The position numbers and the translations under genes were made by a program. From Octopus sinensis (lineage: Eukaryota): a stretch of 64,000 nt of DNA. Below are positions 29,717-30,634 of the stretch, piece by piece (within the stretch, counting starts at the first letter, position 1; each line of letters starts with the position of its first letter). The stretch spans positions 7,874,001 to 7,938,000 of the forward strand of contig NC_043004.1 in the NCBI RefSeq assembly GCF_006345805.1, in the 5' to 3' direction. The notes beneath the pieces were generated by a model. That model made no database searches, was not told the origin of the DNA, and saw only the letters and a program-made list of their open reading frames with translations.

Positions 29717-30634
29717 TTAGTCAGTTTTCAGCGCGTTGTCCGTGTTACTTGGCGACACGGATTTGTTTAAAAAGGGAAACTGTTTCTTGAAATCTGTGTC
29801 TGTGTTGTGAAGTACCTCAAGGAAATCAACCACTAATTCATCCAATAATTGTTCATTGAGAGAAGTGTCCATATAAAAATGCCATGGATTTTGTTGGGAA
29901 GACAACGGAATCTTCCAGTTACCCCATTCAATAAACAAATGTATACAGATAGATGCGATAGTTTTTGCCGTATATTTGAGAGAGAACTTCGTTAAAATCA
30001 GACAGCATGTAGCAAACTGGTTAATTATTTTCACTAATTTACCTTCGAGTTTGATTATGTTACATACTTTGATAATATGAGATTGGGGTAGTGTAATGCG
30101 AAAATCGAAGTTTAAACAAACTAAAAGGGCTTCTTCATAAAGGAAAAAGTCTTTGGCTATCCGATTAATGGTAGTTTTGTTTTTTTCTAAATGTAGATAT
30201 TGTTGGAAATATGTTTGACTTTCGACAATCACTTGCTCAACAGCAAGCAATTTATCATCGAATTTAGCAGCGAAAAACAAACACACGGGTCCCATGAGTT
30301 TATAACTAAACTGGTGGAAGGAGTTATACATATAGAATCGGTGCATATAAACTACGGCAATGTTTAGTATATATTCGCTTAACATCAATCGTTGGTTAAT
30401 GTATAACATAAACATACCTGTTTTCTGACGATAAAGTAATTCGTTTTCATAGGTAAAGTTATCAGGTTGATATTTTCGCTTGAAAATCTCAACAATTTGT
30501 TCTTCGCTGAAAATCCAGTCTGTTTTTCGTGGCGCATTTCCATTGGAGCTTTCAGGTAAATCATTCATCGGAGTTTCATTAGTTTGTTGATTATCAGCAA
30601 TTTCCACCTGTAAGGAATTCTCAGTATTCGCCAT
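29717..30634 (-). CDS. CCNT: Cyclin T-like protein, copy A: intronless, 305 aa, cyclin boxes only
   Basis: ATG at 30632-30634 (MANTENS...) and TAA at 29717. Colinear with the cyclin T N-terminal domain: WIFSEEQI, ELLYRQ, AVVYMHRFY, CLFFAAKFDD, YEEALLVCLNFDF, FSLKYT, WGNWKIP, LLDELVVDFLEVL. The track start at 30796 is a TTG and is not used. Confidence 0.93.
   Translation of the reverse strand: MANTENSLQVEIADNQQTNETPMNDLPESSNGNAPRKTDWIFSEEQIVEIFKRKYQPDNFTYENELLYRQKTGMFMLYINQRLMLSEYILNIAVVYMHRFYMYNSFHQFSYKLMGPVCLFFAAKFDDKLLAVEQVIVESQTYFQQYLHLEKNKTTINRIAKDFFLYEEALLVCLNFDFRITLPQSHIIKVCNIIKLEGKLVKIINQFATCCLILTKFSLKYTAKTIASICIHLFIEWGNWKIPLSSQQNPWHFYMDTSLNEQLLDELVVDFLEVLHNTDTDFKKQFPFLNKSVSPSNTDNALKTD

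What the first reader, a model, noticed from the sequence alone, without database searches (positions are those of the whole stretch)
29717..30634. Mini-cyclin T keeps CDK contacts but loses the HEXIM-binding tyrosine and the whole C-terminal tail
Manual alignment to the recalled human CycT1 sequence: K93 = K124 kept, E96 = D127 conservative, E137 = E167 kept, so CDK9 binding is plausible. Y175, reported as needed for HEXIM1 binding, aligns to N205 (codon 30020-30022), and F176 to Q206. The protein stops about 35 aa after the second cyclin box, so it has no coiled-coil, His-rich CTD-binding or PEST region, and the Tat/TAR motif is replaced. Inference: a P-TEFb that escapes 7SK/HEXIM inhibition, or a dominant-negative CDK9 sponge.
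Basis: partly seen in the sequence, partly recalled or inferred. Interest (0 to 1): 0.82.

Follow-up and report, generated by a model that had tools for sequence, protein, structure and literature searches.

The report
Octopus tail-less cyclin T gene family
Octopuses carry an extra, intron-free, shortened copy of the transcription-elongation cyclin T (six tandem copies in this genome) that keeps the residues used to grip its kinase CDK9 but has rebuilt the groove through which the brake protein HEXIM normally holds it, so it may give an unbraked or decoy form of the elongation factor P-TEFb; whether it is expressed and what it binds is still untested.

Summary
Window 29717-30634 (-) is an intact 305-aa, intronless ORF with both cyclin T boxes. 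Aligned to human CycT1, K93, E96 and E137 match K124, D127 and E167, and Y175/F176 match N205/Q206. It ends about 20 aa after the boxes.

The genome is Octopus sinensis, and RefSeq already names the gene "cyclin-T1-like". New points:
- It is one of six 98-100% identical tandem copies. O. bimaculoides has one unit between the same flanks.
- The canonical cyclin T (another contig, at least 9 exons) keeps Y175, F176, K168, D169, H154, Q46 and V107. HEXIM and 7SK are present.
- The loss goes beyond one tyrosine. Five of seven named residues of the Y175 network changed, plus K168 and D169, while the CDK-contact and AFF4-pocket residues stay.
- A 32%-identical intronless relative in Argonauta shares the derived motifs, so the family is old and fast-evolving. 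dN/dS is about 0.5-0.65 and the ORFs stay open.
- A fold of the complex with octopod CDK9 passes (0.74 against 0.02), possibly from memory.
- Octopus copies carry Glu where human V107E abolishes CDK9 binding.

The scan already noted the amplicon on this window, and cyclin-A-derived clusters elsewhere in this genome.

The parts
29717..30634 (-). Copy 1 of the mini cyclin T gene: intronless CDS, 305 aa plus stop. N205/Q206 (codons 30022-30017) sit at human Y175/F176. E138 sits at human V107. K124 and E167 sit at K93 and E137.
30831..30839 (-). TATA-like box (TATATATAA) about 205 nt upstream of the ATG. It lies inside a roughly 390-nt upstream block conserved in three Octopus species. Putative promoter (inferred).
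45206..46123 (-). Copy 2 of the mini cyclin T CDS (98% aa identity, intact).
53886..54803 (-). Copy 3 of the mini cyclin T CDS (99% aa identity, intact). An in-frame ATG three codons upstream (to 54812) gives the MDQM start also seen in O. bimaculoides.
29311..33820 (.). Core repeat unit shared by all six copies at 94-99% nucleotide identity: CDS, about 400 nt downstream and about 3.2 kb upstream.
20412..64000 (.). Part of the roughly 70-kb tandem array that lies in the window. The array runs on to about G000:C8:7964570, with three further copies at C8:7941317, 7949989 and 7958414. It mixes long units of about 15 kb with short units of about 8.5 kb. O. bimaculoides has one unit between the same flanks.
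34211..35172 (+). (TATG)n microsatellite, about 242 repeats, at the upstream end of each unit. It causes the GC-skew spikes and the spurious long ORFs there.

Best explanation
This is a real, selectively maintained, octopod-specific paralogue of cyclin T. It is intronless, most likely because it arose from a processed copy of the multi-exon cyclin T gene. It encodes only the two cyclin boxes plus short disordered ends. In the O. sinensis/O. vulgaris lineage it has been amplified into a tandem array, with six copies in this genome.

The most likely mechanism (inferred, not shown) has three steps. The protein still docks on CDK9 through the conserved cyclin-CDK interface. It cannot be captured by HEXIM/7SK, because the groove between the two cyclin folds (the Y175 hydrogen-bond network plus K168/D169) has been rebuilt. 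It lacks the C-terminal half that targets canonical P-TEFb to the Pol II CTD. The result would be a HEXIM-insensitive, tail-less P-TEFb. It would either supply unbraked kinase, possibly recruited through the conserved AFF4 pocket, or draw CDK9 out of the regulated pool.

My sub-odds are: real functional gene 0.85; HEXIM binding lost 0.7; CDK9 binding kept 0.55.
For: Shown:
- The ORF carries both cyclin T domains. The AF2 model matches CycT1 with TM 0.88-0.90 by the target's length (0.73-0.75 by the model's) and rmsd 2.0-2.6 A.
- Six intact copies at 98-100% identity. There are intact orthologues in O. bimaculoides, O. vulgaris and a third species known from a Logan contig.
- dN/dS is 0.47-0.80 between species (binomial p 0.02 for one pair). 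A neutral sequence would be expected to gain 4-8 stop codons over the same tree.
- The upstream 390 nt with a TATA box is conserved.
- The canonical gene on C17 has at least 9 exons over 63 kb and keeps Q46, Q50, N60, K93, E96, V107, H154, K168, D169, Y175 and F176.
- The mini cyclin keeps K93 and E137, each present in 122 of 123 cyclin T representatives. It also keeps W207, W210, W221 and Y224 of the AFF4 pocket.
- It changes Y175 (Y in 115/123), H154 (H in 113/123), Q46 (Q in 109/123), Q56, K168 (K/R in 117/123), D169 and F176.
- In human CycT1, Y175E/S and K168E lose Hexim1 but keep Cdk9 (PMC4227133).
- Octopus HEXIM keeps the basic 7SK-binding stretch, PYNT, and the F, F and H residues needed for cyclin T binding. 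Two full-length 7SK hits lie over Rfam's cut-off.
- Complex prediction with octopod CDK9: ipSAE 0.74/0.72/0.74, best control 0.02, partner pLDDT at least 81, runs agreeing in at least 60% of contacts. The mark was reached by 51 of 78 solved and 2 of 108 mismatched pairs. The interface is the PITALRE helix against K124, D127 and E167.
- Argonauta hians has an intronless 257-aa relative sharing the derived LPQSH, YEE, K168-to-acid and F176-to-Q states and the FP[FI]L end.
Against: - No binding or activity was measured.
- The complex pass is for a family with many solved complexes, so it may show likeness only. It cannot see the effect of a single residue.
- Octopus copies have E138 at the position of human V107, and V107E alone abolishes Cdk9, Hexim1 and Brd4 binding while keeping AFF4 (PMC4226998). 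No E or D is among the six commonest residues there in 123 representatives.
- 22 of 62 highly conserved cyclin T columns are changed. The protein is broadly derived, so the changes are not confined to the HEXIM groove.
- The Argonauta relative has lost E96.
- Expression is not shown. Three presumed RNA runs gave only short contigs of depth 2-8, one inside the CDS and the others in non-coding parts of the unit.
- dN/dS near 0.5-0.65 is weak constraint.
Confidence: 0.45

Rival explanations
1. CDK9-free decoy. The mini cyclin no longer binds CDK9 and acts as a natural analogue of the human V107E mutant. It still binds other cyclin T partners through the conserved second cyclin fold (the AFF4/SEC pocket) and titrates them, dampening elongation. 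This would be a dominant negative that acts on partners, not on CDK9.
For: - E138 aligns to V107 in all Octopus copies and species.
- Human V107E loses Cdk9, Hexim1, Brd4 and RNA binding, binds AFF4 strongly and represses transcription (PMC4226998).
- The AFF4-pocket residues named in PMC3589825 (L163-V164-R165, W207, W210, W221, Y224) are kept or conservatively changed to I-I-K, W, W, W and Y.
Against: - K93 and E137 are kept over a long, fast divergence, Argonauta included. That is hard to explain if CDK binding were lost.
- Argonauta has Ile at V107 and Glu at K106, so the Glu is not a family trait.
- The neighbouring K106 is Val in Octopus, which may compensate locally.
- The predicted complex passes.
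- The AF2 model keeps helix H4 at pLDDT about 88.
- No AF4-family hit was obtained in this genome, although that search was uninformative.
Confidence: 0.17
2. A neofunctionalised, fast-evolving cyclin-fold gene whose job lies outside P-TEFb control. Possibilities are a germline-restricted partner of another transcriptional CDK or of a non-kinase protein, or a gene driven by sexual or genetic conflict. The rebuilt groove would then be a new binding site and not merely a lost one.
For: - Only 32% identity between Octopus and Argonauta members, while CDK9 is 99% identical over its last 275 residues.
- Lineage-specific sixfold amplification.
- The rebuilt groove is itself conserved: LPQSH is shared with Argonauta, and KIINQFATCCL is invariant in three Octopus species.
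- The same genome holds other intronless, fast-evolving cyclin-A-derived clusters (earlier scan notes, not tested here).
Against: The closest sequence and fold relatives are cyclin T1/T2, well ahead of cyclin K, L or C. The predicted interface with CDK9 is canonical. No alternative partner is indicated by any result.
Confidence: 0.23
3. Non-functional processed copies, young pseudogenes that merely happen to be open. The automatic 'cyclin-T1-like' annotation would then be an artefact of ORF calling.
For: - The gene is intronless.
- dN/dS is as high as 0.8 in some pairs.
- There is no clear RNA support.
- The O. vulgaris annotation calls only 77-87-aa fragments.
Against: - Every copy examined is open: six in O. 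sinensis, two in O. vulgaris, one each in O. bimaculoides and a fourth species, plus the Argonauta relative.
- P(no stop) under neutrality is 2e-4 to 1.5e-2 for the Octopus tree alone.
- The CDS is about twice as conserved as its flanks (94% against 87-88% between O. sinensis and O. bimaculoides).
- The promoter block is conserved.
- The invariant cyclin residues are retained.
Confidence: 0.1

Closest known systems
Canonical metazoan cyclin T (human CycT1/CycT2, Drosophila CycT, and the octopus gene at G000:C17:17609048-17672119)
   Same: It has two cyclin folds with the CycT2-like C-terminal box. It is 32-34% identical to human CycT1, with TM 0.88-0.90 by the target's length. The K93/E137 CDK contacts and the W207, W210, W221 and Y224 AFF4 pocket are kept. 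The predicted docking on the CDK9 PITALRE helix is canonical.
   Different: It is 305 aa against about 700-1000 aa, with no coiled-coil, His-rich or PEST region. It is intronless against at least 9 exons. The Y175 network, K168 and D169 are replaced. It has Glu at V107. In all, 22 of 62 highly conserved columns are changed. It is tandemly amplified and evolves fast.
Engineered human CycT1 mutants Y175E/Y175S/K168E (Verstraete et al. 2014, PMC4227133)
   Same: The same positions are altered (Y175 to N; K168 to D, or G in copy 1). In human cells these changes remove Hexim1 and 7SK binding and leave Cdk9 binding intact.
   Different: Those are single laboratory substitutions in a full-length protein. 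Here the changes are natural, multiple, fixed across species and combined with loss of the C-terminal half.
Engineered human CycT1-V107E dominant negative (Kuzmina et al. 2014, PMC4226998)
   Same: Glu sits at the aligned position in all Octopus copies, and the AFF4-binding surface is preserved.
   Different: The neighbouring residue is also changed (K106 to V). The Argonauta relative has Ile there. Loss of CDK9 binding is untested here, and the complex model argues against it.
Other intronless, tandem, fast-evolving cyclin-like clusters in octopus
   Same: Same genome, and the same style of gene: single exon, short, tandem, octopod-restricted and fast-evolving.
   Different: Those are reported to have lost the CDK-contact Lys/Glu. 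The cyclin T-derived family keeps them. I did not re-test those reports.

Membership tests
Cyclin T subfamily (P-TEFb cyclin) | Two cyclin folds, with the cyclin T/K-type second box | tested here: met
   Pfam Cyclin_N E 1.4e-10 and CycT2-like_C E 6.7e-35. CycT1 is the best PDB sequence hit at E 2e-44, against cyclin K at 1.8e-12. The AF2 model has pTM 0.77, and Foldseek's top 17 hits are all CycT1/T2, with TM 0.85-0.90 by the target's length.
Cyclin T subfamily (P-TEFb cyclin) | Conserved CDK-contact Lys and Glu (human K93, E137) | tested here: met
   K124 and E167 are present in all copies, all Octopus species and Argonauta. Each is conserved in 122 of 123 cyclin T representatives.
Cyclin T subfamily (P-TEFb cyclin) | Binds and activates CDK9 | tested here: inconclusive
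   Complex prediction gave ipSAE 0.74 against a best control of 0.02, with partner pLDDT at least 81 and at least 60% contact agreement. The mark was reached by 51/78 solved and 2/108 mismatched pairs. The pass may come from memory of solved P-TEFb. E138 at the V107 position argues the other way (PMC4226998). A binding assay is needed.
Cyclin T subfamily (P-TEFb cyclin) | HEXIM/Tat groove: Y175 network (Y175, H154, T179, N60, Q56, Q46, Q50) plus K168/D169 | tested here: not met
   Y175N, H154Q, Q56E, Q46L, Q50R (Q in copy 1), K168D (G in copy 1), D169K and F176Q. Only N60 and T179 are kept. The canonical octopus gene keeps all of them.
Cyclin T subfamily (P-TEFb cyclin) | Long C-terminal region (coiled-coil, His-rich CTD-binding stretch, PEST) | tested here: not met
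   The protein ends at residue 305, 21 aa after the CycT1-alignable part. Residues 293-305 are predicted disordered.
Processed retrogene | Lacks all introns of the parental gene and lies at a different locus | tested here: met
   One continuous ORF on contig C8. The parental cyclin-box region on C17 is split into at least 9 exons over 63 kb.
Processed retrogene | Poly(A) remnant and target-site duplications | tested here: inconclusive
   No A-run or flanking direct repeat was seen in the 570 nt downstream of the stop. This is expected for an insertion older than the Octopus-Argonauta split.
Natural V107E-type cyclin T decoy | Acidic residue at V107 as a family trait, with loss of CDK9 binding | tested here: inconclusive
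   Glu is present in all Octopus copies, but Argonauta has Ile. Loss of binding cannot be tested with these tools.

The most novel reading that the evidence does not exclude
Octopods have evolved, and O. sinensis/vulgaris has recently amplified sixfold, a dedicated 'brake-proof' cyclin T. It would be a minimal CDK9 activator that HEXIM/7SK cannot sequester, whose rebuilt and itself conserved inter-fold groove now binds a new, fast-co-evolving partner. That partner could be a germline factor, or a viral or transposon protein that targets the same groove as lentiviral Tat. This would be the first natural animal P-TEFb isoform outside 7SK control, and a case of genetic conflict acting on the elongation machinery.
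Probability: 0.15. Interest if true: 0.85.

Novelty: new variant of a known kind. Interest (0 to 1): 0.62.

Why it matters
P-TEFb is held in check in animals by HEXIM/7SK through one groove on cyclin T. That groove is conserved from nematodes to humans, with Y175 present in 115 of 123 representatives here. A naturally fixed cyclin T paralogue that keeps the kinase-contact residues but has lost this groove and the whole C-terminal half would be a natural experiment. It would show what P-TEFb does without 7SK control and without CTD targeting. It mirrors laboratory mutants (Y175E, K168E, V107E) that were made to dissect HIV Tat and HEXIM binding.

Its fast evolution and recent sixfold amplification hint at conflict or germline specialisation. 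Together with the cyclin-A-derived clusters noted elsewhere in this genome, it suggests that octopods repeatedly recruit retro-copied cyclin folds. If the gene proves silent or fails to bind CDK9, the finding reduces to a lineage-specific gene family of unknown role.

Tried and rejected
- **RNA support.** One runs search and one read-laying run found no run on record as RNA that holds the stretch. Three presumed RNA runs gave only short contigs of depth 2-8. One lies inside the CDS (29894-30163) and the others in non-coding parts of the unit (30730-31008, 32267-32788). Expression is therefore neither shown nor excluded. The third-species Logan contig (L027) reaches upstream of the TATA box, so it is probably DNA and is not evidence of a transcript.
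- **AFF4.** A search for the AF-4 family (PF05110) in the genome found nothing. The controls did not ring either, so this is uninformative.
- **CDK9 motif.** A first DNA pattern for the CDK9 PITALRE motif found nothing, because an intron splits it. A second pattern found the gene.
- **Tree.** An IQ-TREE run timed out, and FastTree was used instead. The grouping of two further short proteins (P0244, P0219, both from metagenome assemblies) with the mini cyclins is probably long-branch attraction. They are 40-44% identical to canonical cyclin T and P0219 keeps the Y175 motif, so I rejected them as family members.
- **Mobile or viral origin.** Rejected. The units hold no other long ORF apart from frames opened by the (TATG)n microsatellite, and the locus is syntenic with O. 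bimaculoides.
- **Tat/TAR motif.** I dropped its replacement as evidence, because that motif is vertebrate-specific.

Full report
**1. What is at the coordinates**

Window 29717-30634 (minus strand) is an uninterrupted ATG-to-TAA ORF of 305 aa. Pfam finds Cyclin_N (E 1.4e-10) and the cyclin T/K-type second box CycT2-like_C (E 6.7e-35, residues 182-274). The best solved relatives are human cyclin T1 chains (E 2e-44, query 38-284 on CycT1 10-254). Cyclin T2 follows at 9e-38 and cyclin K at 1.8e-12.

An AlphaFold2 model has pTM 0.77. Its core, residues about 40-290, is mostly above pLDDT 85, and residues 1-36 and 293-305 are disordered. It superposes on CycT1 with TM 0.88-0.90 by the target's length (0.73-0.75 by the model's) and rmsd 2.0-2.6 A.

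Read residue by residue, the HMMER alignment gives K93=K124, E96=D127, E137=E167, Y175=N205 and F176=Q206. A MAFFT alignment with 123 cyclin T representatives gives the same pairs.

**2. Organism, annotation and copy number**

The exact protein is on record as "cyclin-T1-like [Octopus sinensis]" (XP_029640159/60/62), on a contig whose length matches the window's contig. The gene model is therefore already in RefSeq under an automatic name. I found no paper that mentions it.

The genome holds six copies at 98-100% amino-acid identity within 55 kb of one contig. Three lie in the window, at 29717-30634, 45206-46123 and 53886-54803. All six are intact.

A core unit (window 29311-33820) is shared by all copies at 94-99% nucleotide identity. 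Three units carry about 7.5 kb more. Each unit ends in a (TATG)n microsatellite.

O. bimaculoides has a single unit between the same two flanks, 89% identical in protein. The amplification is therefore younger than that split. dS is 0.006-0.034 among copies against about 0.10 between the two species. O. vulgaris has at least two full-length, stop-free tandem copies in the 30 kb I read. Its annotation calls four short fragments there.

**3. The parental gene and the 7SK system**

A pattern for the cyclin T signature VYMHRFYM hits seven places in the genome, the six copies and one site on contig C17. That locus, C17:17609048-17672119, is the canonical cyclin T. Its cyclin-box region is split into at least nine exons over 63 kb.

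It is 67-71% identical to other lophotrochozoan and arthropod cyclin T sequences. It keeps Q46, Q50, N60, K93, E96, V107, H154, K168, D169, Y175 and F176. One exon reads ASKDLAQTSYFLATN.

- **HEXIM.** The genome encodes a 260-aa HEXIM (Pfam E 8e-38). It has the basic 7SK-binding stretch, the PYNT motif and the F, F and H residues that PMC4227133 found necessary for cyclin T binding.
- **7SK.** Two full-length 7SK matches lie above Rfam's gathering score, at 55.5 and 46.2 bits.
- **CDK9.** CDK9 lies on contig C4.

The brake that the mini cyclin would escape is therefore present.

**4. The change is a rebuilt groove, not one lost tyrosine**

Verstraete et al. [quoted passage not shown] They show that Y175E/S and K168E lose Hexim1 and 7SK in human cells while keeping Cdk9. 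In their two-hybrid assay, targeted K168 and D169 mutants behaved the same way.

The mini cyclin has these states:

| Human CycT1 position | Mini cyclin |
|---|---|
| Y175 | N |
| F176 | Q |
| H154 | Q |
| H152 | L |
| Q56 | E |
| Q46 | L |
| Q50 | R (Q in copy 1 only) |
| K168 | D (G in copy 1) |
| D169 | K |
| N60, T179 | kept |

Across 123 representatives these positions are strongly conserved: Y175 in 115, H154 in 113, Q46 in 109, and K168 as K or R in 117.

By contrast, K93 and E137 (each in 122 of 123) are kept. So is the AFF4 pocket named in PMC3589825: L163-V164-R165 becomes I-I-K, and W207, W210, W221 and Y224 are unchanged.

The protein is nevertheless broadly derived. 22 of 62 columns that are at least 85% conserved are changed. 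The groove is therefore not the only thing that moved.

**5. Age and tempo**

An exhaustive search of 1.84 billion representatives finds the family's own cluster at 690 bits. The next hit scores 154 bits, a canonical cyclin T at 33-34% identity. There is nothing in between.

In a FastTree of 128 sequences, the mini clade (support 0.999, stem 0.84 substitutions per site against a median branch of 0.10) is sister, at support 0.95, to a 257-aa protein of Argonauta hians. That gene is also intronless. It is only 32% identical but shares several derived states:
- LPQSH in place of DHPHTH
- YEE in place of NEN
- an acidic residue at K168
- Q at F176
- the TC pair after T179
- the FP[FI]L motif just before a similarly early stop

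It has K at Y175.

I take it as a true, very diverged member. The family therefore predates the Octopus-Argonauta split, while CDK9 stayed 99% identical over its last 275 residues.

Within Octopus, dN/dS is 0.47-0.80 between species. One pair has 37 non-synonymous and 17 synonymous differences, binomial p 0.02. 4.6% of random substitutions would create a stop. Neutral evolution over the three-species tree would thus give 4-8 stops, with P(none) between 2e-4 and 1.5e-2. The 390 nt upstream, including a TATA box about 205 nt before the ATG, are conserved in three species.

This is a maintained but weakly constrained, fast-evolving gene.

**6. Does it still bind CDK9?**

I obtained a full-length octopod CDK9 (P0004, 366 aa) by searching with the large last exon of the O. 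sinensis gene. A fold of CDK9(1-330) with mini cyclin(30-305) scored ipSAE 0.74, 0.72 and 0.74, against a best control of 0.02. The partner's pLDDT was at least 81, and the runs agreed in at least 60% of contacts. The mark is reached by 51 of 78 solved and 2 of 108 mismatched pairs.

The interface is canonical. CDK9 residues 55-68 (the PITALRE helix) sit against K124, D127, E167 and their neighbours. As the tool warns, a family with many solved complexes can pass from memory. This shows likeness, not binding.

Against binding, all Octopus copies have E138 at the position of human V107. Kuzmina et al. (PMC4226998) showed that V107E alone abolishes Cdk9, Hexim1, Brd4 and RNA binding while keeping AFF4, giving a dominant negative. 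No acidic residue is among the six commonest at this position in the 123 representatives.

Three points mitigate this:
- The neighbour K106 is Val here.
- Argonauta has Glu-Ile at these two positions.
- Helix H4 is modelled at pLDDT about 88.

I rate retained CDK9 binding at about 0.55.

**7. Expression**

No run on record as RNA holds the stretch. Three presumed RNA runs of the same species label gave only short, shallow contigs. One lies in the CDS and the rest in non-coding parts of the unit, which fits background as well as a rare transcript.

The O. vulgaris gene models start at the same ATG. They splice out of the ORF at a consensus donor (ACAG|GTATGT, codon 73, window about 30418) to a distant exon. 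Whether RNA evidence supports them is unknown.

**8. Verdict**

The interpretation, a HEXIM-escaping P-TEFb or a CDK9 sponge, is the best-supported mechanism but remains inference, at 0.45 overall. The rivals are:
- an AFF4/SEC-titrating decoy that does not bind CDK9 (0.17)
- a neofunctionalised, conflict-driven cyclin fold with a new partner in the rebuilt groove (0.23)
- dead retrocopies (0.10)

It is a new variant of a known kind. It is a member of the cyclin T subfamily by fold and sequence, but it fails two defining features, the HEXIM groove and the C-terminal half.

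Noticed in passing
window 30416-30421 (minus strand, codon 73 of copy 1): A consensus splice donor, ACAG|GTATGT, lies inside the ORF. The four O. vulgaris gene models (77-87 aa) use the same position to splice out of the cyclin ORF to an exon several kb away. This could be an annotation artefact or a real short isoform.
   Followed up: partly
window 34211-35172, and the equivalent places near 49700-50700 and 58350-59150: A (TATG)n microsatellite of about 240 repeats lies at the upstream end of each array unit. 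It explains the GC-skew spikes and the clusters of overlapping 'ORFs' of 110-280 aa there.
   Followed up: yes
window 32814-33187: A very high-copy interspersed repeat, SINE-like, with depth 1e5-1e7 in every run laid. It sits inside each unit upstream of the gene.
   Followed up: no
window about 18660-20400: This stretch aligns to the end of the O. bimaculoides locus that carries an EMP70 (TM9SF-type) gene on the opposite strand. It is probably the conserved neighbour gene that marks the proximal edge of the array.
   Followed up: partly
window 10001-12000 and 16001-18000: There are strong negative GC and AT skews (GC skew -0.26 and -0.30) with overlapping long ORFs. These are probably further low-complexity repeats. 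I did not examine them.
   Followed up: no
It has Q81 (human Q50, the canonical residue) where the other five copies and the other species have R. It has G198 (human K168) where the others have D.
   Followed up: partly
L042 (ENA metagenome contig ERZ21867824:ctg122904l, 465 kb), gene 6001-6819: A 272-aa intronless cyclin T-like protein (P0244) lies on a large metagenomic contig with dense short genes. It has lost the Y175 motif (ASSLARC) but is closer to canonical cyclin T (40%) than to the octopus family. Its origin is unknown.
   Followed up: no
G000:C4:64236778-64237605 (L028:873-1697, minus strand): Octopus CDK9 has an unusually large last exon covering residues about 92-366, three quarters of the protein. 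The PITALRE motif is split from its preceding residues by an intron.
   Followed up: partly
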